From Sphyrna mokarran (taxonomy: Eukaryota), in contig JAGIQG010000009.1 in assembly GCA_024679065.1 (NCBI GenBank), forward strand, positions 90,024,001 through 90,088,000: a DNA stretch of 64,000 nt, read 5' to 3'. Positions 3,951 through 55,960 of the stretch are shown here, one piece after another. The notes below the pieces were generated by a model, which was not told where the DNA came from, ran no database searches, and saw only the letters and a list, made by a program, of their open reading frames with translations. The position numbers and the translations under genes were made by a program. Numbering within the stretch: position 1 is the stretch's first letter; each line of letters starts with the position of its first letter.

Positions 3951-6381
3951 TAAAGTGGCTAACAATGCGTGTGAAGGGAACCCTGAGCATTGGTTAGAGA
4001 ATTGTGTGTTTTCTCCAGACAGCACAGTAAGTGAGGTTTTTTGCTAACCCAGGCAAGTTACGGGGGTTACAGATAGTGTGACATGAAGCCATTATCCCTA
4101 TTAAGACCGTCCTCATGTGTGCGGAACTTGGCTATCAGTCTCTGCTCAGCGACTCTGCACTGTCATGTATCACGAAGGCCCCCTTGAAGAACATTTACCT
4201 GCAGGTCGGAGGCCGAACGCCCGTGACTGCTGAAGTGTTCACCCACAGGAAGGGAACTGTTTTGCCTGGTGATCGTTGAGCGATGCTCATTCATCCGCTG
4301 TTGTAGTGTCTGCGTGGTCTCCCCAATGTACTATGCTTCGGGACATCCTTTCTTGCAAGGTATTAGGTAGACAATGTTGGCCGAGTTGCAAGAGTATGTA
4401 CCATGTACCTGGTGAATGGTATCCTCACGTTTGATGATGTCGTCCATGTCTATGATCTGGCATGTCTTGCAGAGGTTGCTGTGGCAGGGTTGTGTGGTAT
4501 TGTGGTCACTGTTCTCCTGAAGGTTGGGTAGTTTGCTGCGAACAATGATCTGTTTGAGGTTGTGCGGTTGTCTGAAAGCAAGAAGTGGGGGGGTGGGGAT
4601 GGCCCTAGCGAGATGTTCATCGTCATCAATGATATGTTGAAGACTCCGGAGAAGATGTCGTAGCTTCTCTGCTCCGGGGAAGTACTGGACAACAAAGGGT
4701 ACTCTGTCCACCGTGTCCCGTGTTCGTCTTCTGAGGAGGTCAGTGCGGTTTATTGCTGTGGCACGTCGGAACTGTCGATCGATGAGTCGAGCGCCATATC
4801 CTGTTCTCACGAGGGCATCCTTCAGCGTCTGGAGGTGTCTGTCACGATCCTCCTCATCTGAGCAAATTCTGTGTATACGGAGGGCTTGTCCATAGGGAAT
4901 GGCTTCTTTAACGTGTCTAGGGTGGAAGCTGGAGAAGTGGAGCATTGTGAGGTTGTCTGTCGGTTTGCGGTACAGTGAGGTGCTGAGGTGACCGTCCTTG
5001 ATGGAGATGCGTGTGTCCAAGAATGCAACTGATTCTGGAGAATAGTCCATGGTGAGTCTGATGGTGGGATGGAACTTGTTGATATCATCATACAGTTGTT
5101 TCAATGATTGTTCACCATAAGTCCAAAGGAAAAAGATGTCATCAATGTATCTAGTATATAACCTTGGTTGAAGATCTCATGTGGTGAAGAAGTCTTGTTT
5201 GAACCTGTGCATGAAAATGTTGGCATACTGAGGTGCGAATTTGGTCCCCATGGCTGTTCCATGTGTCTGGATGAAAAGCTGATTGTTGAAGGTGAAGACA
5301 TTGTGGTCCAAGATGAAGCGGATGAGTTGTAAAATTGCATCCAGAAACTAGCAGTTGTTGGCATTGAGTACTGAGGCAGTTGCAGCAATACCATCGTCGT
5401 AGGGGATGTTGGTGTAGAGCGCCGAGACATCCATTGTGACAAGGAGTGTCCCTGGTTCTACTGCTCCATGTGTGCTGAGTTTCTGTAGGAAGTCCGTAGT
5501 GTCAAGACAAAAGCTGGGGGTTCTTTGTACAATGGGTTTCAGGATGCCCTCAATATAGCCAGAGAGGTTCTCACACAGGGTCCCATTGCCCAAAATGATG
5601 GGACAGCCGGGTATGTTTGCCTTGTGTATCTTTGGGAGGCAGTAGAGATCTCCAATGCGGGGAGTACGTGGAATGAGAGCCCGGAGGGTGTTCTGAAGGT
5701 CCTGATCAAAGGTTTTGATCAGATTGTTGAGTTGACGAGTGTGTTCTTTGGTTGGATCTGCTGGTAACTGTCTGTAGTGTTTCACATTGTTTAGTTGTGG
5801 GTACACTTCTTCACAATAGTCCATTCTGTTCAGTATGACGGTGGCGCCTCCTTTGTCTGCTGGTTTGATGACAATGTTGCGGTTGGTCTTGAGAGCACGG
5901 ATGGCCTTGCTTTGTGCTTGGGTGATGTTCGGGACGGTCTTGTAAGTGCGGTTGATGAATCTGGTGTTCACGCACCTTCTGATGGCTTGGGCATATATGT
6001 CCAGTCGGGGGCAGCGGTCTTCCGGAGGAGTCCAATTGGATTCATTCCTCTTCGGTTGCTGCACTGCAGATCCCTCTGTCGGCTGTCCTGGTTCACTAGC
6101 TGTCTCAATGTATCCAATTGGACTCTTCCGGAAGGCCGCTGCCCCAGACTGGACATGTATACCCAAGCCATCAGGAGATGCGTGAACACGAGATTCATCA
6201 ACCGCACTTACAAGACAGTCCCGAACATCACCCATCCCGAACATCACTCAGGATTCCCTTCACACACATTATTAGCCACTTTAAGACTTGAATAGCAGGT
6301 TAGATGTAAGGATTTGCATTCTAATCAGCAATCTGTGACTGTCTGTGTTGATATGTGTGCTATTGCAGACCAGAACACTGC

Positions 6382-6420
6382 ATTTGCCTGACGAAGACAG
6401 AGTGTCGAAAGCTCGCAAAT
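6382..6420 (+). ncRNA. Minimal type-I hammerhead ribozyme motif in Penelope pLTR
   Basis: atttgc-CTGACGA-a-GACA(gag)TGTC-GAAA-gc-TC-gcaaat: 6-bp stem I (atttgc/gcaaat), 4-bp stem II, palindromic AGCT stem III. One extra A follows the CUGANGA box. Confidence 0.75.
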
Positions 6421-8479
6421 TTACTATCAAATAAATCTGTTGGATTTAAAATTGGTGTTGCTAGATTCTTACTACCCCAGTCCAACGCTGGCATCTCTAC
6501 ATCATGTTTGATTCCTATCCATGGTCACACTGTAGGCATGTCTTCGTAATCCCGATTACATCATTCCTCTTTCCACCTATTGATTCTTACCCTTGGTTTC
6601 TCTGCTAATCACTTTCTTGATCCTCTCTGTCTTTTGTTCTTACCTTGTTTCCTTGTTTTAAAGCTCAGTCATTGTTACTGATGCATACCATGACCATTGG
6701 CCATTCAGCCTCCTCCTCCAGAATGTCCTGCAGCTGCTCTGAGATCTCCTTGACGCTTGCACTAGGAGGCAACATGCCATTTTGGTGTCTTGTTTGCAGC
6801 CACAGAAATGCCTATCTATGTCTCTTACCATTGAATCCTTTGTAACTATTGCATTCCCACATTTTCTCCTTCTTTCCTGTGCAGTAGAGCCAAACACATG
6901 GCAATAAATTATGCTGAGAGGCCATTCCTGTCAACAGTATCCAAGTAGTATATATTTTGTAGGGGAATGGTCACAGGAGATTCCTGCACTACCTACTTAG
7001 TGGTCATGCATTCCCTTCTTGCCTGTAGAGTTTGGGTTTGCAATATAACTACCTCTCTGTACATGCTATTCACAATACTCTCCCCAGTGTCCCAAGACAC
7101 TGCTCCAGCTCCAAAATCTGGACTTCCAGGAGCTGCAGCTGGAGATATTTCCTACATACATGCTGGCCTCATGCATTGAAAAGCATTCCCAGCTTCCCAT
7201 ATTGTGCAGGTGGCACATACCCTAGCTTTCAGCTTTCCTGCCATGACTTACCACTTTAAATTAAACCATTTGGGAGATACTTAAAATCAAATATTAATTA
7301 CTCTAGTATCCTTCTTCCCTGGTCCTCTATTGTAGAAAAATAGCCTAGACAAACTATAAACGCCAAAATAAAGACCTTATAAATTATAATAAGTAGTAAA
7401 TACTTAGTCGGCTCAGTGGTTTGCAATACCCCAGGTCATTTTTGAATCCTGTTGTCACCTCAAGAGCTCCAAACCAGTGCTCAGATTTCTTCCTGCACTC
7501 TTGCTCTGCTTTCAATCTCCTCTCATATCCTCTTCTACATGCTGGTAACTGTCTGTTCCAGTTTCCTCTTCTCACACTCTCCTCTAGGTGCTGCTGACTG
7601 TCCTTTCCCATGGCCTCTTCCCACACTTTCCTCTAGATGCTGCTGAATGTCTGTCCCAGTGCCCACCTCTCGTACTCTTGCTATCTGTCAGCCCAAATCT
7701 GAATCTTGTCCTGTCCTTGATGTATGTGAACATGAACTGCTTCTGCACAGTTATCTTTTTGAAAATAAACCTCCACCAAGTCATTAAGCAAAAAAAATGC
7801 CATCAAAATAAAATCAAAAGATTACATACAGACCAGCAGGCAACATTATTGTTTTAGTTATGAAGACTAGACTTTGAATTGATACAAGGTGATCCAGCAA
7901 AATATAAACTGCTTTTCCTGGAAAATTGACTATAAAGGAGCTTCACATAATGGAAAATTACTTGGGAAAGCAGAATAATTTTCTGGGAATATACAAATCA
8001 CGGTTTAAACTAAGACAGTAGGATATAATTGGGTATTCTGCTTTTAAACAAAGTTTCAGAGGACAGTTTGGTTTGCCACTATAGTAAACCCATTCTCCTG
8101 AAAAGGAGTAAACATTGAACCTGTTATAGCCCTGTACAACAGTCAAGAAGAAAATATTTTTAATTGTCATTCAGAGATTTTAGGAGAGAGAGTAAAGTTT
8201 TAGGTGACTGTAAAGTTAATAGCATTTTTGCATTAGGTATTGATGAAGATTCAACATGTTGGAAGAAAACATTCTAGAGAGGGGACACATTGTGTTTGGT
8301 AAGTGGTAAAGTTGCTAAAGCAATAATGCAGAGACCCGATCTAATATCTGGGGACATCCTACCACAACAGTTGATGGAGTTCAATGTTTTAAAAACGTTT
8401 AATGGAAAGCCAGTCTATTTCATTGATCAAAACCGTGTTCATTAATGCCTTTAGGGAAAGAAATTTTTTATTCTTTTTT

Positions 8480-8640
8480 TGTCTGACCTCACTGGACCAC
8501 AGATAAACAACGTGGTTAACTCTTGATTGCTGCCTGAAATTGTTTAGCAAGTCACTCACTTCAAAGGCAATTGGAGATGGGCAACAAAATCTGACCCTGT
8601 CAATGACTCTCACATCCCATGATAGCATAAAAAAATTCCT
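8480..8640 (+). mobile_element. Degenerate SINE 3' part (Deu/SacSINE-like)
   Basis: aaggcaattggagatgggcaacaaaat...cacatcccatgatagcataaaaaaa resembles the tail of Deu-domain SINEs of sharks. Confidence 0.45.
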
Positions 8641-8939
8641 GGTGGGAAAGATTAGTGAATGTTTAATTTGCTGTGGGTAAAGCAACAAAGCTGTTGCTGT
8701 TTTTTTCACCTTTCTCAACCTGCTAGATCTATAATCATTTTTGTAGTCACTTTCATTTTTCTACATGCATTTCAGATTAGTGTCCATGTTAAACCTGTTG
8801 CCATGGATACAAATATTGAGGGCCGAAGGGCCTGTACTGCGCTGTAATGTTCTATGTTCAAATTAACTTAACTATTACATGTAATAACATTGCGAGAGCG
8901 TCATTTGTACTCTTGTACCTTGCAGATCTATAAAAACTG

Positions 8940-9135
8940 TGAAAAGTAAAGTTGCTATAGTCCGAGATGACTATAGACTCCTCTGCTCGAAGGGGAAAGC
9001 TGAGTGGTGATAATTTAACCTGATGATCACCACACCTCAGGCAAGGGGCAAGGCTGCGAAGGGGAGCGTCAGCTGGTACAGGAATTGAACCACTGCAATA
9101 GGTTTCACTCTGCATAATGAACCAGCCATCAGAGC
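8940..9135 (-). mobile_element. tRNA-derived SINE
   Basis: Minus-strand A-box-like (tggctggttca) and B box (ggttcaattcc) followed by a body ending in a (cttta)n-like tail. Confidence 0.55.
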
Positions 9136-9469
9136 CTATAAAAATTGCAAAAGCCTACAGTCTCTGGATTTGGGCATAGGGTACAAACGGCCCTGGGCTT
9201 TGGTGCAAGTGGTCACTGGATTCAATGCCACAGTGAAGCTATTGCAAACATTGTCACATTAGTCATAAATGATGAAGATGAATGATCAGGTCTATTGTTG
9301 CAGCTGCAAATATCTATGATGAACTGGAGAAGTTACTCCTTCACTGCAAACAACTTACGAGACAGATCTGATTTTCCCAACTAAACAAGGAATTTAATGA
9401 CCATCAGTCCCCTCACTCCAACACACACAGCAGATCAGTACAAACACCTGGTACAGGATCAATAAATTA

Positions 9470-9975
9470 CATATAGGAACAATATGAACTGGAGCAGCAG
9501 CAGGCCACTCAGCCCTTCGAGCCTGCTCCACCATTCAATATGATCATGACACTGTAATCTCAACCCCACATTTCTATCAACCCCTGATAATCTCTCACCC
9601 TCTTGTTAATCAAGAAACTATCTAGCTCTGCTTTAAAAGTTTCTGCTTCAGCTGTCTTTTGATGAAGAGTGTCAGACACTCATGGCTCTCAGAGAAAGAA
9701 AATCCTCCTTTCTGTTTTAAATGAGTGCCTCCTTATTTTTAAACAGTAGCTCCTAATTCTAAATCCTCTGACAAGAGGCACCATCCTCTCCATATCCACC
9801 CTGTCATTACCTCTCAGGACTTAAGGACTTTGATGAAGTCACCTAAACTCTTCTAAACTCCAGCCTAGCCTTTTGAACCTTTCCTCATAAGTTAACCCTT
9901 CCATTTCTGCTCATAGACTTGTAAATCTTCTCTGAACTGCTTCCAACATATTTATATCTTTCTTTAAATAAGGAA
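9470..9975 (-). mobile_element. CR1 LINE 3' end
   Basis: CR1 C-terminal coding remnant and 3'UTR/tail (ggagcag...ggccactcagcccttcgagcctgctccacc). Confidence 0.75.
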
Positions 9976-10367
9976 AGTCAGAGGGCACAGTGAATGTAAT
10001 GGCCATCCCTAAGGAGAAAGTTCTGGGGAAACTGAAAAGTGGGAAGATGGATAAATCATCTGGACCGGACAACATCCCAGTGTTCTAAAAGAGATAGCTG
10101 AGGAAATTGTGGAGACATTGGTGGTGATCTTTCAGGGATCACTGAAGGCAGGCTTTCAACACTGGAAAGTAGCTAACGTAACACCGCTGATTAAAAAGGG
10201 AGGAAGCTGACAGAAAAGCCTGATTTTGGTCATTAGTAAGATTTTAGAGTCCGTTATTGAAGATGAGATTGCTGAATACTTGGAATGATAAAATAGGACC
10301 GAGTCAACACGGCTTCGTCAAGGGGAGGTCATGTCTGACAAATCTGTTAGAGGTCTTTGAGGAAGTA

Positions 10368-10847
10368 CATAGAACGTAGAACATTATAGTGCAGTACAGG
10401 ACATTTGGCCGTCGATGTTGCGCCGACTAATGGCACTAATCTAATGACCCTCTAATCTAAACTATTCCAATGTTATCCATATGCCTATCCACTGATCCAT
10501 TTGAACACCCTTAAAGTTGGTGAGTCCACAACTGCTGCAGACAGAGCATTCCACGCCCTTATTACCCTCTGGGTAAACAGCCTACCTCAGACATCCATCC
10601 TATAACTACCACCCCTTAAGTTAAAGCTACGTCCCCTCGTGTTAGCCATCACCATCTGAGGAAAAGGGCTCTGATCGTCCACACTATCTAATTCTCTGGT
10701 CATTTTATATGCTTTATTAAGTCACCTCTTAATCTTCTCTCTAACAAAAACAGCCTCAAGTCCCTCAGCCTTTCCTCATAAGACCTTCCCTCCATACCAG
10801 GCAACATTCTGGTAAACCTCCTCTGCACCCTTTCCAATGTTTCCAAT
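10368..10847 (-). mobile_element. CR1/HER1 LINE 3' fragment
   Basis: HER1-type tail (catagaac repeats) plus ORF2 C-terminus. Confidence 0.88.
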
Positions 10848-11233
10848 CCTGGCATGGATAGAGGATGGGCTTACTGGCAGAAGGCAGAGAATGGGAATTA
10901 AGGGGTTCTTTTCAGGATGGCAGCCGGTGACTAGTGGTGTGCCTCAGGGGTCAGTGTTGGGAACAAAGCTTTTCACAATATATTAACGATTTGAAAAGAA
11001 AAACTGAAGGCACTGTTGCTAAGTTTGCAGATGATACAAAGATACGTGGAGGGACAGGTTGTATTGAGGAAGCAGGGGGATTGCAGAAGGATTTGGACAG
11101 ATTAGAAGAGTGGGCAAAGAAATGGCAGATGGAATACAATGTGGAAAAGTATGAGGTTATGCACTTTGGAAGGAGGAGTGGAGGTACAGACTATTTTCTA
11201 ATTGGGAAAATGCTTCAGAAATTGGAAACACAA

Positions 11234-12400
11234 AACATAGAACATAGAACATTACAGCGCAGTACAGGCCCTTCGGCCCTCCATGTTGCGCCGGCCAGTG
11301 GACCCTCTAACCTAAACTATTCCAATATCATCCATATGCCTATCCACTGACCATTTGAATGCCCCCAAAGTAGGCGAGTCCACAACTGCTGCAGGCAGGG
11401 CATTCCACCCCCTCACCACCCTCTGTGTAAAGAACCTGCCTCTGACATCCATCCTATAACTACCACCTCTTAATTTAAAGTTATGTCCCCTCGTGTTGGT
11501 CATCACCATCTGAGGAAAAAGGCTCTCACTATCCACCCTATGCAATCCCTTGATCATCTTATACGCCTCAATTAGGTCACCGCGTAACCTTCTTCTCTCT
11601 AAGGAAAATAACCTCAGGTCCCTCAGCCTTTCCTCATAAGGCCTTCCCACCATACCAGGCAACATCCTGGTAAACCTCCTCTGCACCCTTTCCAATGCTT
11701 CCACATCTTTCTTATAATGCGTCGACCAGAACTGTACGCAATACTCCAAGTGCGGCCGCACCAGAGTTTTGTACAGTTGTAACATAACCTCAAGGCTCCT
11801 AAATTCAATCCCTCCACAGGGATTGCTAACACACTGTACACCTTCTTAACAACTTTATCAACCTGGGTGCAAACTTTCAAAGAGCTATGTACTTGTACCC
11901 CAAGATCCCTCTGCTCAACAACACTATTAAGGGTCCTTCCATTAGCCCTATATTTCATATGCCTGTTATTCCTACCAAAGTGAATCACCTCACACTTATC
12001 CGTATTGAATTCCATTTGCCACCTCACGGCCCAGCTCTGCAACCTATCGATGTCCCTCTGCAAACTGTAACATCCATCCTCGCTGTCTACAACTCCCCCC
12101 ACTTTGGTATCGTCAGCAAATTTACTAATCCAACCCTCTACACCCTCATCTAGGTCATTTATAAAAATGACAACAGCAGTGGCCCCAAAACAGATCCTTG
12201 AGGTACACCACTTGTAACTGCACTCCAGGTTGAATATTTCCCATCAACCACCACCCTCTATCTTCTATCAGCTAGCCAATTCCTAATCCAAACTGTTAAA
12301 TCACCTTCAATCTCATGCATCTGCACTTTCTGCAGTAGCCTACCATGGGGAACCTTATCAAACGCTTTGCTAAAATCCATATACACTACATCAACTGCCT
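11234..12400 (-). mobile_element. CR1/HER1 LINE, 5'-truncated
   Basis: ORFs 11312-11785 and 11623-12102 (LYKTLVRPHLEYCVQFWS, WQMEFN); tail at 11234-11255. Confidence 0.93.
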
Positions 12401-13997: not shown

Positions 13998-16320
13998 ATA
14001 GGCCAACTAGAGGTGAGGCTACATTGGATTTGGTGCTGGGCAATGAGCCAGACCAGGTGTTAGGCTTGGAAGTTAGTGAACATTTTGGTGATAGTGACCA
14101 CAATTCGGTACGTTCACCTTAGTGATGGACAGGGATAGGCATGAAGCTGGGGGCAGTAGTTATAGCTGGGGGAAGGGTAATTATGAGGCCATCAGGAGAG
14201 AATTAGGGTGCATAGATTGGACTAGGAAACTACAGGGACTGGGAACATCTGGAATGTGGTGCTTATTCAAGGAGCAGCTGCTGCGAGTCCTTGATAAGTA
14301 TGTCCCTGTCAGGCAGGGAGGAAATGGTCGAGTAAGAGAGCCTTGGTGTACGAAAAAAGTTGATTTGCTGGTTAAGAAGAAAAAGGAGGCTTATGTCAGG
14401 ATGAGGCTTGAAGGCTCAGTTAGTGCAATGGATAGCTATAGATTAGCCAGGAAGGAGCTAAAAAGTGAATTGAGGAGAGCTAAGAGGGGACACGAGAAGA
14501 TGTTGGCTGATAGGATTAAGGAGAATCCTAAAGCTTTCTTTCGATATGTTAAGAATAGAAGATTGGTTAGGGCAAGATTAGGGCCAGTCATAGACAGCAG
14601 TGGGAAGTTGTGCGTGGAGCCTGAAGAGATTGGTGAGGCACTGAATAAATATTTCTCTTCGGTATTCACGCAGAGTGCTGGAAATGTAGCTATGGAGAAC
14701 ACTGAGGTACAGGGTTGCAAATTGGGAAGTATTGTAGTAGATAGGGAGGATGTGTTAGAAATTCTCGAGGGTTTGAAGTTGGATAAGTCCCCTGGGCCGG
14801 ACGGGATTTACCCTAGGATTCTCTGGGAGGCAAGAGAGGAGATTGCAGAGCCTCTGGCTCTGATCTTCAGGTCCTCGTTGGTTACGGGTGTGGTTCCGGA
14901 GGACTGGAGGATAGCGAATGTGGTCCCATTGTTTAAGAAGGGGAAGAGAGACCTTCCAGGGAATTATAGGCCAGTGAGTCTTACTTCTGTTGTGGGCAAG
15001 GTATTGGAGAGAATTATTAGGGATAGGATTTATAGTTATTTAGAGAGAAATGAATTGATTGGGGATAGTCAGCATGGTTTCGTGACCTTACTAACCTCAT
15101 TGAGTTTTTTGAGAAAGTGACCAAAGAGGTGGATGGGGGTAAGGCGGTTGATGTAGTATATATGGACTTTAGTAAGGCGTTTGATAAGGTGGCCCATGGA
15201 AGACTTCTACAGAAAATGCAGATGTGTGGAATAGAGGGTGATTTAGCTAATTGGATTAGGAATTGGCTGGCAGATAGAAGACAGAGGGTGGTGGTTGATG
15301 GGAGATATTCATCGTGGAGTTCGGTGACAAGTGGTGTGCCTCAGGGGTCTGTTTTGGGGCCCCTGCTGTTTGTAATTTTTATAAATGATCTGGATGAGGG
15401 TATTGAGGGATGGATCAGTAAATTTGCAGATGACACTAAAGTCGGTGGAGTGGTAGATAGTGAAGAGGGGTGTTATAGTTTACAGAGTGACTTGGACAAG
15501 TTGCAGAGCTGGGCCGAGAGGTGGCAAATGGAGTTTAATGTGGAAAAGTGTGAGGTAATGCACTTTGGCAGGAACAATAAATGTGTAGAGTATAGGGCTA
15601 ATGGTAGGGCTCTTAATAGTGTTGAGGAACAGAAGGATCTTGGTGTATGTGTCAATAGATCCCTGAAAGTAGGCAGTCAAGTGGATAAAGTTGTTAAAAA
15701 GGCATATGGAGTCTTAGCTTTTATTGGTAGGGGGATTGAATTTAGGAGCCGCAGCATCATGTTGCAACTGTACAAAACTCTAGTGCGGCCGCACTTGGAG
15801 TATTGTGTGCAGTTCTGGTCCCCACATTATAAGAAAGATGTGGAGGCATTGGAGAGGGTACAGAGGAGGTTTACCAGGATGTTGCCTGGTATGGAGGGCA
15901 GGTCCTATGAAGAGAGGTTGAAGGATTTGAGGTTGTTTTCGTTAGAAAGGAGGCGGCTAAGAGGGGATCTTATTGAAGCATATAAGATGATTAGAGGTTT
16001 AGATAGGGTGGACAGTGATAGCCTTTTTCCTAGGATGGAGAAAGCTAGCACGAGGGGACACAGCTTTAAATTAAGGGGTGATAGTTATAGGACGGATATC
16101 AGAGGTAGGTTCTTTACTCAAAGAGTGATTAGGGAGTGGAATGCCCTGCCTGCAGCTGTTGTAGATGCGCCAAGTTTGGTGGCGTTTAAGAGGTTAATTG
16201 ATAAGTATATGGAAGAGAAGGGAATGGTTTAGTTTGGAGGGGCATTGCTTTTTATTTTGGTCGGCACAACATCGAAGGCCGAAGGGCCTGTTCTGTGCTG
16301 TAATGTTCTATGTTCTATGT
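13998..16320 (+). mobile_element. CR1/HER1 LINE, young, ORF2 from the end of the endonuclease to the tail
   Basis: ORFs 14122-15120 and 15117-16232 (small deletion/frameshift near 15085) with complete RT (SKFADDTK) and (gttctat)n tail. Confidence 0.96.
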
Positions 16321-21200: not shown

Positions 21201-21512
21201 ACGTGACCAAAGTATTTTATGAAATTCTTATAATTTCTGCATATAATTTTTCTCCTTGAATGGTGGATTTTGAATAAATAGAGTTATTAAATGGTTTATA
21301 GGCAATAGGGTTTGATCTCTGGGGTCACCGCACTGAACATGATAAAATTCTCCCCCCTTTCCCCACTGGGCTCAGGATGTTATTTAACTATCGGGAGGTG
21401 AATCCATGGGGAGGAGCCGCGGGACTGAATCCAGTCCCGGTTTCCCCGGGGCTGCTCTCACTCTCACCCGCCCGGGGCCCGGGGCCCGGGGAGGGTGAAC
21501 CCGGTCACTCAC

Positions 21513-21761
21513 CTCTCGGTTCCGCGGTTCCGTTCCAGCGGTTCTTCAAAACATTTAAATTGTTTTTCGCGGTGGCGATTTCGGCTGAGATTCCCTCCTC
21601 TCCTCCCTGTATTCTGATGTGCTGGAACTCGGGAATCCGCGCCACCTCTTTCTTCAGTTTAAAATCCATGTAATAAACCTCATCCCAGTCATCCTCCACA
21701 TCCCACTGTTTATCCGGAAAACTGTCCTGAACAAACAGGACCAGGCGATGCCGGTGAACAT
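21513..21761 (-). CDS. mhc2a: MHC class II alpha chain, exon 2 (alpha-1 peptide-binding domain)
   Basis: Acceptor ctctctctcacacag|AT and donor AG|gtgagt; 249 nt, phase 1-1, no stops. Translates (Y)VHRHRLVLFVQDSFPDKQWDVEDDWDEVYYMDFKLKKEVARIPEFQHIRIQGGEEGISAEIATAKNNLNVLKNRWNGTAEPR, with the class II alpha-1 motifs DE-x-Y-Y-M-D, KKE-V-A-R-I-P-E-F, KNNL and the N-G-T sequon. Confidence 0.95.
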
Positions 21762-37500: not shown

Positions 37501-38951
37501 ATCACAAAAAGAGGTACCTGATGAGCTGTAACTGATGGTTGAATGAGGGAGCCTCATGTTCCCTATTTGAAGCAGGTGTATCAGTCTCTCAGTCTGCCAC
37601 AGCAGAGAGATACTAGGAGTGCTAGCTCTGTATATATAGTATAGCTGGTAAATAAAGAAGCTTGGTGATGGAATTCTCGCCTCCATGGAGTTATTTCAAT
37701 TGCATCGCATTTCCTTCTGTTAACTTAATTGGAGAGGGAAATGGCTGCAAAATTCATCTCTGCTGTGCTGGTGGCTTGTTGTACGGGATCTGGTTGGGGT
37801 AAAAGTGGCAGGAGAATTGTTCTGGACTATTTATAGTATAGACCACATCAATCGCCATACTGTGGAAGATGGGCGTGCCAGGGACATACAGAGTGGAAGG
37901 TCACGATATCAGTCAGTGTGTAATGCTGACTTATGGTCCAATCTACATTTTGGACTGAGCACTCCTGTTATTGTCCTCTATTATATGTGATGAGCAGAAT
38001 TTTATACCCTTATTGCACCCGTTTTGCGGTGGAAAAAGATCATAAAATTGGAAGTGCTGGAACTAGCGGGAATGGTAACTATTTTCATACCCATTTCAAT
38101 TTTACCAAAAAATATCGGTGTGATTGGGACCTTGTCCAAAATGGGTGAAACACTATTTTTATTTTTTTGCATTCGTCACAATGTAATTAACGAGCTTCAC
38201 TCCTAATCACCCCAGCTTACCTTCCTTAACCACCTTGTTCGCTGCCGCTAGAACTGATCAAGAAAACATCTTATGTTTAAAAGTCAGATTCAGATGCTGA
38301 AGCACAGAGGGTAGGTGGTGAGGAGGTCAGTCTCTGCTTTCAAATGGATCTGTGCTGTTCAAGGAGGAGGGGGGGAACTGTTTCATAGCAGCCATGTTGC
38401 ATTTCAGGTTGCACGGGGCTGCAAGTGTGTGGAGGATGGGGAGCTTTTGGTGCTCATTGGGTCTGACTTCAGCCTCTCAGCTTGGACTTGGTCTGAGTGC
38501 CAACCTTGGGGCTTGGCGCTGACTCTGGGTCCTAGTGCATGGCAACAGCAAACACTGTTGCAGGTGGGGGATGAGCTGGAAACTCTCTGAAGTGTCAGCA
38601 CTGCAGCCTCAGCACTTTGTGAAGAAGCACTGTCTGGGGACACCCACTACATGGGTTCTGGGTGTGTGTGTGAGGGGTGGAATAGGAGCCCTGTGTTGCC
38701 ATTCTGGGGGACTATGGGGGTTTATAAGGAATGCGTGATGCTGGGGATCTGTTTGGTGGAGCATGAGCAATGTGCGTTCCTGGGGGGATATGGGGAGTAT
38801 GGGGAGTGTGTGTGTTGCTGGGGGTCTGTGTGGGGAAGTATGGGAAATGTGTGTTGCTAGGAGTCTGTTGAAGAGGGTATGGGGAATGCGTGTGGCTGGG
38901 GCTGTGTTGAGGGGGTATGGGGAGTGTGTGTGGCTGGGACAGTGTGATGCT

Positions 38952-39793
38952 ACAAATCCTACCTTGGCGCCTCAACGTGGCGTAGGAGTGACACTGGCCG
39001 AACATCAGCAAAGTACGGTGGAGATTCGCTCTCTGACAGGCCTAACCAAGCTGTGAAGGTGATATTCCTTCGGTATACTACTAGACTAGATTTGGTAGTA
39101 GGACCGTGGCTAGCTAAGTCAAGGAGGTAACTGAGGACGTCGGCAGCAGGGCGTCTGATGGTGTTTGTGGCAGATGAACCCAAAGGGTCAATGGTACAGT
39201 CACCTTGATGGCATGCGGAAGAACCAGAGTGCTGGTCAACGGATGAATCATTAGACTAGTTGTCACTGTGGGGCAGCTTTCTTATCCGCTAAGTATGTTA
39301 TACTTCTGCGTACCACTTAGCATCAGATTTGGAAGCCCAGAGAGACTGTATGGTGGGGGCACGACACCGTCTGTCTCATTACTGTGCAAGGCGTGTTGGA
39401 AGTAAAGTTCCTGGATGACATTGAAAGCCCTATGGCGATGGAGTTAATGTGACGGCAGCAGGATTGAGGAGCTGGAAGCTGCTAACTTGAGCTCTGCACA
39501 TAGGCGGCTCACACAAGAAGGTCGCTACCTTGTTGAGTTTTCTGAGCAACAACAAGGTTGAGGCAGCTATGTGAGTGTCCGGGCAGCCCTTTTTAGGGAC
39601 AGCACTGCCCGCCCTGAAAGGGGAAGCCCCTAGAAAAGGTGGGGTAAAGATACAAATCAGACAAATCACAGTTGCCACCGACGTGGGAGACAATGCCGAT
39701 CCAATACAGGCCTTATAACACACCACCGTGCCTGCAGAATCTAAACTTCCAACACAGCCAACATCGAAATCGATGGACGGCTGAAGGGGAGGG
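38952..39793 (+). mobile_element. Non-autonomous bipartite RTE-derived retroelement (5'UTR fused to the extreme 3' end), 8-bp TSD
   Basis: TSD gtgatgct at 38944-38951 and 39794-39801; RTE 5'UTR-like motifs (gggcagcccttttagggacagcactgccc...cctagaaaaggtg); RTE C-terminal Cys/His remnant HSCHRRGRQCRSNTGLITHHRACRI* at ~39667-39744; no EN/RT. Confidence 0.72.
38956..39050 (+). ncRNA. Candidate HDV-like self-cleaving ribozyme at the 5' end of the RTE-derived element
   Basis: P1 (a)tcctac 38956-62 / gtagga(g) 38982-88; P2 cttgg 38963-67 / ccaag 39046-50; P3 gcc/ggc around L3 TCAACGT; P1.1 CA/TG; P4 region 38991-39041; J4/2 CTAA 39042-45. Confidence 0.62.
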
Positions 39794-39970
39794 GTGATGC
39801 TGGGGGTTTGTGTGGGTGGGTGTAGAGAGTGTGTGTTGCTGGGGTCTATGTGGGGGGGTTATGGGGACTGGGTGTTGCTGGGAATTTGTATGCAGGGCAT
39901 GGGGAGTATGTGTTGCAGGGGATTTGTTTGTGTGGCTATGGGAAGTGTGTGTTGCTGCTGTTTGTTGGGG

Positions 39971-40716: not shown

Positions 40717-41741
40717 GGTGTAGGGTATGGGGACTGTGTGTTGCTGCGTGGTGTGTGGCGAGGTATGGGGAGTATGTGTTGCTGGGGGTGTGTTGGAGGG
40801 GTATGGAGAGAGTGATTGCTGGGGGAGTTGGTGGGGAGGTATGGGAAACATGCATTGCAGGGGGTCTGTGGGGGATTATGGGGAGTGAGTGATACTGGGG
40901 GTCTGTGTGGAGGGTTGAGGGCAGTGTGTGTCGATGGCGGTATGTAGGTGTGATAAATGTGGAGTCTGTGTTGCTTCGGGGTCTGTAGGGGGAATATGGG
41001 GAGTATGTGTTGCTGAGGGAGTATGTGTTGGGGATGATATGGGGAATGTGTGTTGCTGAGGGAGTGTGGGGAGGAGTACGTGGAGTGTGTGTGTTGCTGG
41101 GGGAGTGAGGGGGTGTGGTTTGGGGGGTGTATGTGATGCTGAAAATCTATTGCGAGAGGTGTATGGGGAGTATATGTTGGTGGGGGGGTTGGGGGTGGAA
41201 TTTGGGGAGTATTCATTGCTGGGGATCTGTTGGAGGGTTATGGGGAATGTGTGTTGTTGGGGGTCTATCGTGGGGTATGGAGAGTGAGTTACTGCTGGGA
41301 TCTGTTGGGGGATTGTAAAGGGAGTGTGTGTACTGGGGTCTGTGGGGAGGATGTGGGAGGGTACATGTTGCTAGGTGTCTGTATGGAGGGGTATGTGGAG
41401 GTTATGTTGCTGGGCTGGTGTTGTGGGAGAGTGGTTTGGGGAGTGTGTGGTGCGGGGGGTCTGTTGAGAGAAGTGCATGGGTGTGTGTGTGTGTTGCTGG
41501 GGGTCTGTGGAGGGTTATAGGGACTGTGCATTGCTGGGAATGTGTGGGGTGAGTATAGGGAGCGTGTGTTACTTTGTGTCTATGTGAGGGATATGGTGAT
41601 TGTGTGTTGTTGGGAGAATGTGTGGGGTCATATGGGGACTGCGTTTCTGGGGATAAGTTGGATAGCATGGGGAGTTGTGTTTTGCTGGAGGTATGTGGGG
41701 GAGGGAGTGGGGAATGTCTATTGCTGGGTGTCTGTGGGGGA

Positions 41742-43925
41742 TATAGAACATAGAACATAGAACATTACAGCGCAGAACAGGCCCTTCGGCCTTCGATGTT
41801 GTGCCGACCAATTAGGAAAAAGCAATGACCCTCTAACCTAAACCATTCCCTTTTCGTCCATAAACTTATCTACTAACCTCTTAAACGCCACCAAATTTGA
41901 TGCATCTACAACTGCAGCAGGCAGGGCATTCCATACCCTTATCACCCTCTGGGTAAAGAACCTACCTCTGACATCCGTCCAATAACTACCACCCCTTAAT
42001 TTAAAGCTATGTCCCCTCGTGCTAGCTTTCTCCATCCTAGGGAAAAGGCTATCACTGTCCACCCTATCTAAACCTCTAATCATCTTATATGTTTCAATAA
42101 GGTCTCCTCTTAGCTGCCTTCTTTCTAACGAAAACAACCTGAAATCCCTCAGCCTCTCTTCATAAGACCTGCCCTCCATACCAGGCAACATCCTGGTAAA
42201 CCTCCTCTGCACCCTCTCCAATGCCTCTACATCTTTCTTATAATGCGGGGACCAGAACTGTACACAATACTCCAAGTGCGCCCACACTAGAGTTTTGTAC
42301 AGTTGCAACATGACGTTGCGGCTCCGAAATTCAATCCCCCTACCAATAAAAGCTAAGACTCCGTATGCCTTCTTAACAACCTTATCGACTTGATTGCCAA
42401 CTTCCAGGGATCTATGCACATATACACCAAGATCCCTCTGTTCATCAACACTATTAAGAGTCCTACCATTAGCCCTATACTCTACACATTTGTTATTCGT
42501 GCCAAAGTGAATTACCTCACACTTTTCCACATTAAACTCCATTTGCCACCTCTCGGTCCAGCTCTGCAACTTGTCCAAGTCTCTCTGCGAACTAGAACAC
42601 CGCCCTTCGCTATCTACCACTCCTCCGACTTTGGTGTCATCCGCAAATTTACTAATCCATCCTTCAATACCCTCATCCAGATCATTTACAAAAATTACAA
42701 ACAGCAGGGGCCCCAAAACAGATCCCTGAGGTACACCACTTGTAACTGAACTCCACGATGAATAATTTCCATCAACCACCACCCTCTGTCATCTATCAGC
42801 TAGCCAATTCCTAATCCAATTAGCTAAATCACCCTCAATCCCATATATCTGCATTTGCTGCAGAAGCCTTCCATGGGGCACCTTATCGAACGCTTTACTG
42901 AAGTCCATATATACCACATCAACTGCCTTACCCCCATCCACCTCTTTGGTCACTTTTTCAAAAAACTCAATAAAATTAGTAAGGCATGACCTATCCTTCA
43001 CAAAACCATGCTGACTATGCCCAATCAATTCATTTCTCTCTAAATAACTATAAATCCTATCCCTAATAATTCTTTCCAATAGTTTGCCCACAACAGAAGT
43101 ATCTAACTTCAAACCCTCAAGAACATCTAGCACATCCTCCTTATCTACTTCAATACTTTCCAGTTTACAACCCTGTATCTCAGTGTTCTCCACAACTACA
43201 TTTACATCTCTCTGCGTGAATACTGAAGAGAAATATTTGTTCAGTGCCTCTCCAATCTCTTCAGGCTCCACGCACAACTTCCCACTGCTGTCCATGACTG
43301 GCCCTAATCTTGCCCTAACCAATCTTCTATTCTTAACATATCTAAAGAAAGCTTTAAGATTCTCCTTGACCCTATCAGCCCTATCTTGTGTCCCCTTTTA
43401 GCTCTCCTCAACTCACTCTTTAGCTCCCTCCTGGCTAATCTATAGCTATCCAGTGCACTAACTGAGCCTTCAAGCCTCATCCTGACATAAGCCTCCTTTT
43501 TCTTTTAACCAGCAAATTAACTTTTTTAGTACACCATGGTTCCCTTACTCGACCATTTCCTCCTTGCCTGATAGGGACATACTTATCAAGGACTCGCAGT
43601 AGCTGCTCCTTGAATAAGCTCCACATTTCAGATGTTCCCAGTCCCTGTAGTTTCCTAGTCCAACCTATGCACCCTAATTCCCTCCTTATGGCCTCATAAT
43701 TACCATTCCCCCAGCTATAACTACTGCCCCCAGGTTCATGCCTATCCCTATCCATCACTAAGGTGAACGTAACCGAATTGTGGTCACTATCACCAAAATG
43801 TTCACCAACTTCCAAGTCTAACACCTGGTCTGGCTCATTGCCCAGCACCAAATCCAATATAGCCTCACCTCTAGTTGGCCTATCTACGTACTGAGTCAAA
43901 AAACCTTCCTGCACACTTTGTATAA
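41742..43925 (-). mobile_element. CR1/HER1 LINE, 5'-truncated with internal deletion
   Basis: ORFs 43477-43914, 42789-43322 (LKLD joined directly to TSVVGK, i.e. deletion near 43100) and 41838-42782; tail at 41742-41765. Confidence 0.95.
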
Positions 43926-53050: not shown

Positions 53051-55960
53051 GGATGTGAATAGGGAGGTCATGGTTTCTAGGTCGCAGCAGTATAGTGGCA
53101 AATGGGAGGGTGGTTTGAAATGTGTATACTTTAATGCGAGGAGCATACGCAATAAGGTGGATGAACTTGCAGCCTGGATTGATGCTTGGGACTTCGATGT
53201 TGTGGCCATTTCAGAGCCGTGGATAGAGCAGGGGCAGGAATGGTTGTTGCAGGTTCCGGGGTTCAGATGTTTCAGTCAGAGCAGAGGTGGTGGTAGAAGA
53301 GGGGGAGGAGTGGCACTGTTAGTTAAGGACAGCATTATGGTGGCAGATAAGACGTTTGATGTGGACTTGTCTGCTGAGGTAGTGTGGGCTGAGATTAGAA
53401 ACAAGAAAGGAGAGGTCACACTGTTGGGAGTTTTTTATAGGCCTCCAAGAAGTTCCAGAGAAGTAGAGGAAGGGATTGCAAAGTTGATCCTGGATAGGTG
53501 TGAAAGTAACAGGGTAGTTGTAATGGGGGACTTTAACTTTTCTAATATCGATTGGAAAAGCTATAGTTCAAGTACGTTAGAGGGGTCAGTTTTAGTTCAA
53601 TGTGTGCAGGAAGGTTTCATGACTCAGTATGTAGATAGGCCAACAAGAGGCGAGGCTATATTGGATTTGGTACTGGGTAATGAACCAGACCAGGTGTTAC
53701 ACTTGGAGGTGGGTGTGCACTTTGGTGATAGTGACCACAATTTGGTTACGTTTACCTTAGTGATGGAAAGGGATGGGCACATACCGAATAACAGTACTTA
53801 TAGCTGGGGGAAAGGTAATTATGAGGCTATTAGGAGAGATTTGGGATGCATAGGGTGGAGCAGGAAATTGCAGGGGCTGGGGACATCTGAAATGTGGAGC
53901 ATATTTAAGGAACAGCTTCTGCATGTCCTTAATGAATATGTACCTGCCAGGCAGGGAGGAAGTGGTCGAGTGAGGGAACCATGGGGTACTAGGGAAGTTG
54001 AATCTCTGGTGAAGAGGAAGAAGGAGGCTTATATAATGATGAGACGTGAAGGCTCAGTTAGGGCACTGGAGAGGTATAAATCAGCCAGGAAGGAGCTAAA
54101 GAGGGAGTTGAGAAGAGCTAGAAGAGGACACAAGAAGACTTTGGCGGATAGGATTAAGGAGAATCCTAAAGCTTTTTACAGTTATATAAATAATAAAAGA
54201 TTGTTAGGGCAAGATTAGGGCCAGTCAGAGATAGCAGTGGGAAGTTGTGTGTGGAGCCTGACGAGATAGGAGAGACACTGAATGAGTATTTTTCGTCAGT
54301 ATTCACGCAGGAGAAAGACAGTGTTGTCGGGGAGAATACTGCGATACCAGGTTGTAGACAGGGTAGGATTGAGGTTCATAAGGAGGAGGTGTTAGCCAAT
54401 CTTGAGGGTATGAAAATTGATAAGTCCCCTGGGCCAGATGGGATTTACCCCAGGATTCTCTGGGAGGCTAGAGAGGAGATTGCAGAGCTTTTGGCTTTGA
54501 TCTTCATGTCGTCGTTAGCTACAGGTATAGTGCCGGAAGACTGGAGGATGGCAAATGTTGTCCCTTTGTTCAAAAAGGGGAGTAGGGACCATCCTGGAAA
54601 TTATAGACCGGTGAGCCTGACTTCTGTGTGGGCAAGGTCTTGGAAAGAATTATAAGGGATAGGATTTATAAGCATCTAGAGAGAAATAAATTGATTAGGG
54701 ATAGTCAGCACGGTTTGTGAAGGGTAGGTTGTGCCTCACAAACCTTATTGAGTTTTTTGAGGAGGTGACCAAAGAGGTAGATAAGGGTAAGGCAGTTGAT
54801 GTAGTGTATATGGATTTTAGCAAAGCGTTTGATAAGGTTCCCATGGTAGGCTACTGCAGAAAGTGCAGATGCATGGGATTGAAGGTGATTTAGCAGTTTG
54901 GATTAGGAATTGGCTAGCTGATAGAAGACAGAGGGTGGTGGTTGATGGGAAATATTAAACCTGGAGTGCAGTTACAAGTGGTGTACCTCAAGGATCTGTT
55001 TTAGGGCCACTGCTGTTGGTCATTTTTATAAATGACCTAGATGAGGGTGTAGAGGGTTGGATTAGTAAATTTGCTGATGATACCAAAGTGGGGGGAGTTG
55101 TAGACAGCGAGGATGAATGTTACAGTTTGCAGAGGGACATAGATAGGTAGCAGAGCTGGGCCGTGAGGTGGCAAATGGAATTCAGTACGGATAAGTGTGA
55201 GGTGATTCACTTTGGTAGGAATAACAGGCATATGAAATATAGGGTTAATGGAAGGACCCTTAATAGTGTTGTTGAGCAGAGGGATCTTGGGGTACAAGTA
55301 CATAGCTCTTTGAAAGTTGGCACCCAGGTTGATAAAGTTGTTAAGAAGGCATACGGTGTGTTAGCTTGTATTGGTAGAGGGATTGAATTTAGGAGCCGTG
55401 AGGTTATGTTACAACTGTACAAAACTCTGGTGCGGCCGCACTTGGAGTATTGTGTACAGTTCTGGTCACCGCATTATAAGAAAGATGTGGAAGCATTGGA
55501 AAAGGTGCAGAGAAGGTTTACCAGGATGTTGCCTGGTATGGTGGGAAGGCCTTATGAGGAAAGGCTGAGGGACCTGAGGTTATTTTCAGTAGAGAGAAGA
55601 AGGTTACGCGGTGACCTAATTGAGGCGTATAAGATGATCAAAGGACTGGATAGGGTGGATAGTGAGAGCCTTTTTCCTCGGATGGTGATGACCAACACGA
55701 GTGGACATAACTTTAAATTAAGAGGTGGTAGTTATAGGACGGATGTCAGAGGCAGGTTCTTTACACAGGGGGTGGTGAGAGCATGGAATGCCCTGCCTGC
55801 AGCAGTTGTGGACTCGTCCACTTTGGGGGCATTCAAATGTTCGGTGGATAGGCATATGGATGATATTGGAATAGTTTAGGTTAGAGGGTCCACTGGCCGG
55901 CGCAACATCGAGGGCCGAAGGGCCTGTACTGCGCTGTAATGTTCTATGTTCTATGTTCTA
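53051..55960 (+). mobile_element. CR1/HER1 LINE with near-complete ORF2 (APE endonuclease + RT), disrupted
   Basis: LKCVYFNARSIRNK, VMGDFN, SDH, DKSPGPDG, NYRPVSLTS, WQMEF, LYKTLVRPHLEYC; several frameshifts and stops; tail ends at 55960. Confidence 0.96.

What the first reader, a model, noticed from the sequence alone, without database searches (positions are those of the whole stretch)
38952..39793. Ribozyme-capped, protein-free RTE derivative: HDV-like fold at the 5' end of a bipartite retroelement
Seen: an 842-bp insertion with an 8-bp TSD and no EN/RT coding. It joins RTE-like 5'UTR motifs directly to the last ~25 codons of an RTE ORF (HSCHRRGRQCRSNTGLITHHRACRI*). Its first ~100 nt supply every pairing of the HDV nested double pseudoknot in the right order: P1 tcctac/gtagga, P2 cttgg/ccaag, P3 gcc/ggc, L3 UCAACGU, P1.1 CA/UG (a compensatory variant of CC/GG) and J4/2 CUAA. 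The predicted cleavage site (38955/38956) is 4 nt inside the TSD-defined 5' end. Established: HDV-like ribozymes occur at 5' ends of R2 and RTE retrotransposons, mostly described in invertebrates. Inference: a SINE-like family with no Pol III head that excises itself from host transcripts and borrows RTE machinery. Caveats: A-G at the cleavage-site pair, almost no J1/2, and one unpaired C between P2 and P3.
Basis: partly seen in the sequence, partly recalled or inferred. Interest (0 to 1): 0.82.

Follow-up and report, generated by a model that had tools for sequence, protein, structure and literature searches.

The report
Ribozyme-headed non-coding LINE derivative, truncated copy
This is one slightly truncated copy of a protein-free jumping element, found in several related animals, whose front end has the shape of a self-cutting HDV-like RNA and whose back end is borrowed from an abundant LINE; the kind is known from insects and trypanosomes, so it is a new example, not a new principle.

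Summary
An 842-bp non-satellite insert lies in a 38-bp satellite, flanked by GTGATGCT on both sides. It has no EN/RT coding.

A descriptor I wrote (helices plus recalled core letters) hits only this site in the window and in 0 of 200 shuffles.

Contigs of four other organisms show a multi-copy family with a breakpoint at 39650/39651. The last 136 nt belong to a far more deeply covered LINE tail. Two organisms join the same head to a shorter tail.

All 5 of the 40 listed differences that lie inside the ribozyme span fall in P4, at unpaired or pair-improving places. None is listed in P1, P2, P3, L3, J4/2.

Other copies carry about 9 further shared letters upstream, including a second strand that pairs perfectly (7 bp) with 38982-38988. 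This copy looks 5'-truncated.

There is no covariation, no Rfam hit and no assay. The partner LINE was not retrieved, so "RTE" is untested.

Precedents are R2 SIDEs and L1Tc/NARTc. An earlier unchecked note of this scan (s1-887134) reports a candidate HDV-like ribozyme at an RTE 5' end elsewhere in this genome.

The parts
38944..38951 (+). left copy of the 8-bp flanking repeat GTGATGCT (putative TSD). Its last two letters, CT, also match the family's own 5' sequence.
   Evidence: homology of other copies starts at 38950 (X1 record 4 and the loose ends before 38950)
38950..39650 (+). head of the element. It is non-coding and shared with copies in four other organisms. In some contigs it continues past 39650 into other sequence (a longer parent).
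   Evidence: table 8 pieces; loose ends behind 39650 in X1 (1 contig, 255 nt) and X5 (2 contigs); no protein family.
38957..38962 (+). In full-length family copies this stretch would lie in J1/2.
   Evidence: 6 Watson-Crick pairs with 38982-38987
38963..38967 (+). P2 5' strand CTTGG
   Evidence: 5 pairs with 39046-39050
38969..38981 (+). P3 (GCC/GGC) enclosing L3 TCAACGT. CCTCAACGTGG matches 9 of 11 letters of the block called most conserved in R2 ribozymes.
   Evidence: (passage of PMC5035012 giving CCUCCUCGUGG)
38982..38988 (+). P1 3' strand GTAGGAG. It is the exact complement of the CTCCTAC that other copies carry upstream of this copy's start.
   Evidence: table 7 (consensus letters before 38954 in X5 and X11 end in ACTCCTACA; X1 ends in AACTC before 38950)
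38989..38990 (+). J1/4 TG, which forms P1.1 with C38973 and A38974
38991..39041 (+). P4 region. The predicted three-way fold has a closing stem (38992, 38994-96 with 39037-40), hairpin A (38997-39003/39013-19) and hairpin B (39020-24/39030-34). It is not better than shuffles.
   Evidence: -9.3 kcal/mol, z +0.49; the 5 listed differences at 39010, 39019, 39029, 39036 and 39041 all fall at unpaired or pair-improving places.
39042..39045 (+). J4/2 CTAA with the candidate catalytic C39042
   Evidence: no listed difference at 39042-39051 table 3 (40 of 120 rows shown)
39046..39050 (+). P2 3' strand CCAAG
39651..39786 (+). tail taken from an abundant LINE: the last 30 codons of its ORF (39652-39741), the stop (39742-44) and a 42-nt 3'UTR. 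In other copies an (AAG)n-like run follows.
   Evidence: loose ends before 39651 (X1 1 contig, X2 3 contigs) read as open frame; a 2897-nt X1 contig holds the tail at its end; summed depth in X2 is 4616-11449 here against 212-714 in the head; loose ends behind 39786 begin AAGAAGAA
39787..39793 (+). GGGAGGG between the last family-homologous base and the right flanking repeat. It is either a degenerate tail or target satellite; undecided.
39794..39801 (+). right copy of GTGATGCT (putative TSD)

Best explanation
The insert is one copy, about 1.6% diverged by the listed differences, of a non-autonomous, non-coding non-LTR retroelement.

A ~700-nt head is joined at 39650/39651 to the last 136 nt of an abundant LINE. 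That piece holds the end of ORF2, a short 3'UTR and then a GAA/AAG-type repeat. It supplies the site the LINE's reverse transcriptase recognises for target-primed reverse transcription.

At family level the first ~100 nt of the head form an HDV-like nested double pseudoknot: P1, P2, P3/L3, P1.1, a variable branched P4, and J4/2 with a catalytic C. This most likely cuts the element's RNA out of read-through transcripts and so fixes its 5' end.

The working P1 is probably the upstream CTCCTAC strand seen in other copies (7 Watson-Crick pairs with 38982-38988). Cleavage would then fall just 5' of that strand, near the family's 5' boundary. It would not fall at 38955/38956.

The window copy began 5-9 nt inside that strand (a 5'-truncated insertion). 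It also carries private changes: C39041 next to the catalytic C, T39019 and A39010. It is probably a dead copy that keeps only the weaker 6-bp P1.

Shown: the family, the junction, the tail sharing, the pairings and their rarity. Inferred: cleavage, its site, read-through transcription, and the identity of the partner.
For: - Pairings all present.
- Descriptor with core letters: 1 hit in 128 kb of both strands, and 0 of 200 dinucleotide shuffles with any hit.
- The P3-L3 block equals 9 of 11 letters of R2's most conserved ribozyme block (passage of PMC5035012).
- P1 of 6-7 bp, P2 of at least 5 bp, a variable P4, J1/4 of 0-2 nt and P1/P1' spacing from 23 to over 700 nt are all within the norms described for R2 ribozymes (sections 16 and 18 of PMC3774820).
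- 19, 155, 281 and 294 contigs of four organisms lie on the stretch. Of the 40 listed differences (120 in all), 5 lie in the ribozyme span. All 5 are in P4: loop, junction, G-U to G-C, or creating A38991-U39041. None is listed in 38954-39009 or 39042-39051.
- The upstream loose-end consensus of X5 (20 contigs) and X11 (16 contigs) both end in ACTCCTACA.
- Breakpoint at 39650/39651, with an open frame upstream in the tail's owner.
- Organisms D and F join the same head (to about 39395) to a ~35-nt related tail. 14 of the 15 listed joints show this.
- No tRNA or other RNA-gene head.
- Precedents: RTE and baggins carry HDV-like ribozymes (review PMC6765202). L1Tc and the non-coding NARTc share the ribozyme, with C at +1 judged from the primer text. 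R2 SIDEs.
Against: - No covariation: the core carries none of the listed differences, which says nothing for the pairs themselves.
- 80 of the 120 difference rows were not shown, so minor variants in the core are unseen.
- No Rfam family matches even at E up to 10.
- Nested MFE of the first 109 nt is no better than shuffles: z 0.25, and 108 of 200 fold as well.
- A competing nested fold of -26.0 kcal/mol beats P1+P3+P4 at -18.3.
- P4 is not better than shuffles.
- There is no G-U at the cleavage pair in either register.
- P1.1 has an A-U pair.
- The upstream P1 strand is known only from 30-letter consensus lines with agreement of about 0.5. The family's exact 5' end is therefore inferred.
- The density of D/F-specific listed differences in the ribozyme span (2 in 98 nt) is not clearly below that of the next 349 nt (13).
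- The descriptor's core letters were recalled and chosen after seeing the site.
Confidence: 0.58

Rival explanations
1. The element is a real head-plus-LINE-tail retroelement, but the HDV-like match is a chance resemblance or a dead relic. The conserved 5' end would work as an internal Pol II promoter or initiator, or as a protein-binding site. That is what defines the 5' end.
For: - No covariation.
- No Rfam hit.
- Nested folds are not better than shuffles.
- A competing fold is 7.7 kcal/mol better than the nested part of the model.
- Helices alone occur 9 times in the window, against a shuffle mean of 3.9.
- Both possible cleavage pairs are non-canonical.
- Some non-LTR elements do carry promoters that start at the first base (Introduction of PMC3774820).
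Against: - The full descriptor has 0 hits in 200 shuffles.
- The site sits within the first 100 nt of the element.
- The core letters match R2's conserved block at 9 of 11 positions.
- The listed differences avoid every core segment.
- The strand that gives a perfect 7-bp P1 lies at about the family's 5' boundary.
Confidence: 0.3
2. The ribozyme uses P1 38957-62/38982-87 with the A38956/G38988 mismatch and cuts between 38955 and 38956, also in full-length copies.
For: - This P1 is present in the window copy and directly abuts P2.
- R2 ribozymes tolerate mismatches in P1, described there at the top of the stem.
Against: - Copies in organisms A, B, D and F align to the window up to 38950-38954.
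- D, F and A share further letters upstream (tables 7 and 8).
- Sequence 5' of a cleavage site cannot be copied into new dispersed insertions.
- This P1 has 6 pairs plus a purine-purine clash, against 7 clean pairs for the upstream strand.
Confidence: 0.1
3. Head and tail have different origins. The head would be an independent ribozyme-bearing module or an unrelated transcript that captured LINE tails more than once, as a SINE does. It would not be the 5'UTR of the same LINE left by an internal deletion.
For: - The same head is joined at two different places (about 39395 and 39650) to tails of different length and sequence in different organisms.
- In X2 the tail is 8-50 times more deeply covered than the head (the tool warns that depth is not copy number).
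- No partner LINE carrying the head was seen.
Against: - Contigs in X1 and X5 continue the head past 39650 into a shared sequence, as a longer parent would.
- An unchecked note of this scan reports an HDV-like candidate at an RTE 5' end in this genome.
- R2 SIDEs arise by internal deletion.
Confidence: 0.4

Closest known systems
R2 SIDEs (Short Internally Deleted Elements) of Drosophila (PMC3414825, abstract read)
   Same: Both are non-coding and join a 5' HDV-like ribozyme directly to the 3' end that the LINE's reverse transcriptase recognises. Both are propagated in trans by target-primed reverse transcription. Hybrids with another LINE's tail exist, as with the two tail versions seen here.
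   Different: SIDEs sit in 28S rDNA and are cut from a Pol I co-transcript. This family is dispersed (here it sits in a satellite), occurs in several vertebrate-like genomes and has a 700-nt head of which only about 100 nt is ribozyme-like. Its cleavage has not been shown.
L1Tc / NARTc of Trypanosoma cruzi with the Pr77 HDV-like ribozyme (PMC3185411, passages read)
   Same: A dispersed autonomous LINE and a protein-free partner share the 5' ribozyme. Cleavage is at +1 of the element. The +1 letter is C, not G. P1.1 is weak. Upstream letters that extend P1 disturb folding.
   Different: Pr77 is also a promoter. The host uses polycistronic transcription. I found no sequence likeness, and the partner LINE here was not retrieved.
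[quoted passage not shown] 2011 is not held)
   Same: Promoter-less non-LTR elements are released from read-through transcripts by a 5' HDV-like ribozyme. The 3' end has a short UTR and a simple repeat.
   Different: RTE membership of the partner is untested here. Which hosts the described examples come from is my recollection (mostly invertebrates). No Rfam HDV-type model matches this site.
R2 ribozyme core (PMC5035012 passage; PMC3774820 sections 15-16)
   Same: CCUCAACGUGG against CCUCCUCGUGG, 9 of 11 letters. P1 has 6-7 bp, P2 at least 5 bp, P4 is variable and J1/4 has 0-2 nt.
   Different: L3 positions 3 and 4 are A A instead of C U. The first of these is matched by a U in J1/4 (an A-U pair in P1.1). 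Which L3 letters are invariant in R2 is shown only in a figure that I could not see.

Membership tests
HDV-like self-cleaving ribozyme | Five helices P1, P2, P3, P1.1 and P4 in the nested double-pseudoknot order, with P1' directly after P3' | tested here: met
   (every pair listed). (the descriptor finds the site).
HDV-like self-cleaving ribozyme | Catalytic C at the start of J4/2, directly after P4 and before P2' (feature recalled) | tested here: met
   C39042 in CTAA, followed by P2' at 39046-50. No listed difference at 39042-39051 in four organisms (40 of 120 rows shown).
HDV-like self-cleaving ribozyme | Conserved L3/P3 letters | tested here: inconclusive
   9 of 11 letters equal R2's most conserved block. 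L3 keeps U, C, C-G and U (pattern recalled). Which letters are invariant is shown in Figure 6 of PMC3774820, which is not held. A C-to-A change in L3 accompanies an inactive sow bug element.
HDV-like self-cleaving ribozyme | G-U wobble at the cleavage-site pair (recalled; title of reference 36) | tested here: not met
The upstream register inferred has C-G. L1Tc, an active member, has C at +1 by its primer text, so the feature is not universal.
HDV-like self-cleaving ribozyme | Pairings kept by compensatory change among copies | tested here: inconclusive
   No listed difference in P1, P2, P3 or P1.1. Only P4 varies: 39019 T>C turns G-U into G-C, and 39041 C>T would add A-U. No copy sequences could be fetched.
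HDV-like self-cleaving ribozyme | Match to a curated HDV-type covariance model (Rfam) | tested here: not met
   0 matches at E up to 10 on 38940-39060. None of the 4 weak matches on 38900-39850 is an HDV-type family. These models are narrow and do not score pseudoknots.
HDV-like self-cleaving ribozyme | Mg2+-dependent self-cleavage | not testable with these tools
   Needs a transcription and cleavage assay.
RTE clade of non-LTR retrotransposons (as partner) | RT/EN phylogeny of the autonomous element that owns the tail | not testable with these tools
   The partner was not retrieved.
RTE clade of non-LTR retrotransposons (as partner) | Very short 3'UTR ending in a short simple repeat (recalled for RTE; Rex3 tail GCG(GAA)2(GATG)n) | tested here: inconclusive
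   The 3'UTR has 42 nt, and other copies then carry AAGAAGAA.... This fits, but it is not specific to RTE.
Classical SINE | Head derived from tRNA, 7SL, 5S or snRNA with an internal Pol III promoter | tested here: not met
   0 tRNA genes found. No Rfam RNA-gene match near its cut-off.
Ribozyme-headed internally deleted LINE derivative (SIDE / NARTc type) | No ORF; 5' ribozyme joined to the partner's 3' end; many copies with flanking duplications | tested here: inconclusive
   No ORF. The junction and shared tail are shown, and the family is multi-copy. A TSD is present here. Ribozyme activity and a common origin of head and tail are not shown.

The most novel reading that the evidence does not exclude
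The head is a free-standing, self-cleaving HDV-like module that has been kept across several cartilaginous-fish-like genomes. It has captured LINE tails at least twice: at about 39395 with a 35-nt tail in organisms D and F, and at 39650 with a 136-nt tail here and in A and B. That would make it a vertebrate 'ribozyme-headed SINE' superfamily that needs no Pol III promoter and lives on read-through transcription. It would carry two tandem P1 strands that allow alternative cleavage registers.
Probability: 0.3. Interest if true: 0.68.

Novelty: new member of a known kind. Interest (0 to 1): 0.5.

Why it matters
Non-coding elements with a ribozyme head are documented for site-specific R2 in flies and for L1Tc/NARTc in trypanosomes.

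A dispersed, abundant family of that design in vertebrate genomes would show that a self-cleaving RNA can replace the Pol III head that defines classical SINEs. It would give a natural series of P4 and tail variants for studying how such elements are made and recognised. It would also add a testable HDV-like ribozyme with an unusual P1.1 (an A-U pair) and a non-G +1.

In the held library I found no paper that describes an HDV-like ribozyme in a shark RTE or SINE. The search gave 2 papers holding 'HDV-like', 'ribozyme' and 'shark'; by their titles, and by the passages of one of them, neither is on this. The primary RTE paper and its supplements were not available, so a prior description cannot be excluded.

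Tried and rejected
Copies within the window:
- blastn of the insert against the window found only itself.
- The 28-mer of the core, with up to 3 mismatches, matched 1 place, itself.

Copies elsewhere:
- The antisense 74-aa ORF over the ribozyme found no protein.
- These collections hold few animal sequences, so the blanks mean little.

Partner LINE:
- The 30-aa tail against 1.84 billion representatives gave 1 hit. P0001 is a C2H2 zinc-finger array, not a LINE.
- The in-frame stretch cannot be lengthened to 40 aa because of a stop at 39631-33 (read).

Other negative or minor results:
- Nested folding gave no signal.
- The reading 'not an insertion, just odd satellite' is rejected. Hundreds of contigs of other organisms match the insert and not the flanks, except for low-depth satellite matches.
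- A classical SINE head is rejected.
- A second helices-only descriptor hit at 2150-2287 also has a UC..CG.U loop. It was read and set aside. Its P2 strand pairs just as well with the stretch right after J1/4, which makes a plain hairpin, and its J4/2 and P1.1 do not fit.
- I did not establish the taxon. An MHC-like exon is too short for the length window of the search for homologous proteins.
- I built no consensus of the element. Differences were judged place by place on the window's own fold.
- Supplements were not requested. Figure 6 and S2 of PMC3774820 and the supplements of Ruminski et al. 2011 may bear on which core letters are invariant and on which hosts have RTE ribozymes.
Full report
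WHAT IS THERE

Positions 38952-39793 are non-satellite sequence inside a 38-39-bp G-rich satellite. The insert is flanked by GTGATGCT at 38944-51 and 39794-801. That 8-mer occurs 5 times in the window, 4 of them in the satellite region (shuffles mean 2.46), so the duplication alone is weaker evidence than in unique DNA. The boundaries are confirmed independently. Contigs of other organisms match the insert from 38950-38954 to 39786 and then run on into unlike sequence (tables 7 and 8).

The longest ORFs that lie within the insert have 98 and 74 aa; two others that overlap it, of 99 and 97 aa, run out into the satellite flank. 0 of the 5 insert ORFs scanned reach a Pfam cut-off. There is no tRNA. 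No Rfam family reaches its gathering score anywhere in the window, and no RNA-gene head appears at E up to 10. There is no second copy in the window.

I laid four runs, X1, X2, X5 and X11, chosen from the 23 listed as four different coded organisms (A, B, D, F). All four were Logan contigs. 19, 155, 281 and 294 contigs lay on 38800-39950 at 80% likeness or more. No run held half of the stretch's words (best share 0.46), so these are other copies or relatives and not this locus.

Four things follow.

(a) The element is bipartite.
- Contigs break at 39650/39651 on both sides. In X1 and X5 the head runs on past 39650 into a shared, different sequence. In X1 and X2 the tail is preceded by other sequence which, read in the tail's frame, is open.
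- One X1 contig of 2897 nt carries the tail at its very end.
- Summed depth over 39658-39774 in X2 is 4616-11449, against 212-714 over the head. The tool warns that depth is not copy number.
- The window's C39682 is T in A and B. That turns the codon into Cys and restores a CxxC...H...C finger in the tail peptide. So the tail is the decayed end of a LINE ORF: 30 codons (39652-39741), a stop, and a 42-nt UTR.

(b) After 39786 other copies read AAGAAGAA... and then diverge (X2 7 contigs, X5 7 contigs). This is a simple-repeat tail.

(c) In D and F the region 39424-39735 is thinly covered or not covered at all. 14 of the 15 listed joints skip from 39392-39400 (one from 39537) to 39743-39759, with a few odd letters between. 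A loose end behind 39394 reads as a related but different ~35-nt tail. The same head is therefore joined to a different, shorter tail there.

(d) By the listed differences, this copy differs from the A/B contigs at 13 places in about 835 nt.

THE RIBOZYME MODEL IN THIS COPY

- P1 38957-62/38982-87 (6 bp).
- P2 38963-67/39046-50 (5 bp).
- P3 38969-71/38979-81 (3 bp).
- L3 UCAACGU.
- P1.1 C38973-G38990 and A38974-U38989.
- J4/2 CUAA from C39042.

The stretch between (38991-39041) folds into a closing stem plus two hairpins. This fold is no better than shuffles (z +0.49).

Nested folding of the whole 109 nt gives no signal either (z 0.25), and a competing nested fold is more stable than the nested part of the model (-26.0 against -18.3 kcal/mol). 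Such programs do not score pseudoknots, so this neither supports nor excludes the fold.

IS IT MORE THAN CHANCE?

I wrote a descriptor with these parts:
- P1 6 bp
- J1/2 0-12 nt
- P2 5 bp
- 0-1 nt
- P3 3 bp
- L3 7-8 nt
- P1' directly after P3'
- 12-94 nt
- P2'

Results:
- Helices alone, Watson-Crick only: 9 hits on both strands of the window. 200 dinucleotide shuffles give mean 3.9 and sd 2.4, and 10 of 200 reach 9.
- With G-U pairs allowed: 370 hits.
- With core letters added (L3 U-C-n-n-C-G-(n)-U and J4/2 C-n-A-A): exactly 1 hit, this site, and 0 of 200 shuffles have any.

Helices alone are therefore chance level. The core letters were recalled from HDV, CPEB3 and R2 and were fixed after I had seen the site, so the test is partly circular.

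Independent of my memory, a passage of PMC5035012 gives CCUCCUCGUGG as the most conserved block of R2 ribozymes. Here it is CCUCAACGUGG, 9 of 11 letters. Sections 16 and 18 of PMC3774820 describe P1 of 6-7 bp, P2 of at least 5 bp, a highly variable P4, J1/4 of 0-2 nt, and P1/P1' spacing from 23 to over 700 nt. The candidate fits all of these.

CONSERVATION

Of the 40 difference rows shown (80 more were withheld as less supported), 5 fall in the ribozyme span, and all 5 fall within P4:

| Position | Change | Seen in | Place in the fold |
|---|---|---|---|
| 39010 | A>G | all four runs | loop of hairpin A |
| 39019 | T>C | all four runs | turns G38997-U into G-C |
| 39029 | C>T | D, F | loop of hairpin B |
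| 39036 | A>G | D, F | junction |
| 39041 | C>T | all four runs, at full share | window's C is private; a U there would pair with A38991 and bring P4 flush against P1.1 and the catalytic C |

No row falls in 38954-39009 or in 39042-39051. This is the pattern expected of an HDV-like ribozyme: a fixed core and a free P4.

The pattern is weak statistically. D/F-specific rows number 2 in the 98-nt ribozyme span, against 13 in the next 349 nt. An invariant pair proves nothing about pairing, and the fold used to judge P4 came from this same sequence.

THE CLEAVAGE SITE

- Contigs of D and F align up to 38954, and their unaligned upstream letters have a consensus that ends in ACTCCTACA (X5 20 contigs, X11 16 contigs).
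- The single X1 contig aligns to 38950 and is preceded by AACTC.
- X2 contigs align to 38950 or 38951.

With its preceding C this is the exact complement of 38982-38988, giving 7 Watson-Crick pairs.

Letters 5' of a cleavage site cannot be inherited by a dispersed element. The heritable RNA must therefore start at or before this strand.

The overall agreement of these 30-letter lines is only 0.49-0.52. I read that as about 9-10 shared letters followed by unrelated flanks. That would put the family's 5' boundary next to the upstream strand, where an HDV-like ribozyme using it would cut. This boundary is an inference from consensus lines, not a census of copies.

The +1 base is C, paired with G. 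The active L1Tc ribozyme also has C at +1, judged from its primer text. The window copy starts inside the upstream strand, at CTAC or AC, and is thus 5'-truncated. Together with its private C39041, it is probably inactive.

WHAT IT IS LIKE

- The design (ribozyme head, LINE 3' end, no ORF) is that of R2 SIDEs (abstract) and of NARTc beside L1Tc (passages).
- HDV-like ribozymes at RTE and baggins 5' ends are stated in a review (passages). The primary paper is not held.
- A short 3'UTR plus a trimer repeat fits RTE-type ends. This feature is recalled; Rex3's GCG(GAA)2(GATG)n tail is given.
- RTE membership of the partner could not be tested.
- Whether head and tail come from one LINE is open.

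An unchecked first-stage note on another piece of this genome reports a candidate HDV-like ribozyme at an RTE 5' end (s1-887134). I could not compare sequences; the by-sequence look-up was blank. Notes on this window call the genome shark-like. I did not test that.

VERDICT

- A real non-autonomous, bipartite retroelement family: confidence about 0.9.
- A 5' end that is a good in-silico HDV-like ribozyme at family level: about 0.6.
- This copy is probably truncated and dead.
- It is a new member of a known kind. Interest is moderate. It is higher if the head proves to be an active, repeatedly recombined ribozyme module in vertebrates.

Noticed in passing
window 39392-39759 (seen in contigs of runs X5 and X11): In two other organisms the same head is joined at about 39395 to a related but different ~35-nt tail, making a shorter element of about 480 bp. 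Most of the listed joints (14 of 15) are of this kind.
   Followed up: partly
window 2150-2287 (+): A second helices-only hit of my HDV descriptor, with an L3 of the UC..CG.U type. Its P2 strand also pairs with the stretch right after J1/4, making a plain hairpin, and its J4/2 and P1.1 do not fit. It looks like chance.
   Followed up: partly
window 38797-38939, 39792-39957, 40724-41570: A G-rich satellite of 37-41-bp units (GGTATGGGGAGTGTGTGTTGCTGGGG... type) hosts the insertion. Low-depth contigs of runs X1 and X2 also match it.
   Followed up: no
window 14122-16232 (+), 53055-54218 (+), 41838-42782 (-), 2687-3388 (-): Fragments of LINE ORFs: RVT_1 at E 2e-24, 5e-13 and 5e-15, and Exo_endo_phos at E 5e-20. 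None shares sequence with the element's tail.
   Followed up: no
window 21505-21699 (-): A 64-aa ORF that by eye resembles an MHC class II alpha-1 domain. It was not searched because the length window of the protein search would exclude full-length relatives.
   Followed up: no
runs X4, X18, X19, X20: Runs guessed to be RNA hold 5-24% of the element's sampled words. The family may therefore be transcribed.
   Followed up: no
window 39682: C here is T in the contigs of organisms A and B. The T restores a Cys, giving a CxxC...H...C finger at the end of the partner's ORF. The only significant protein match of the tail is a C2H2 zinc-finger array.
   Followed up: partly
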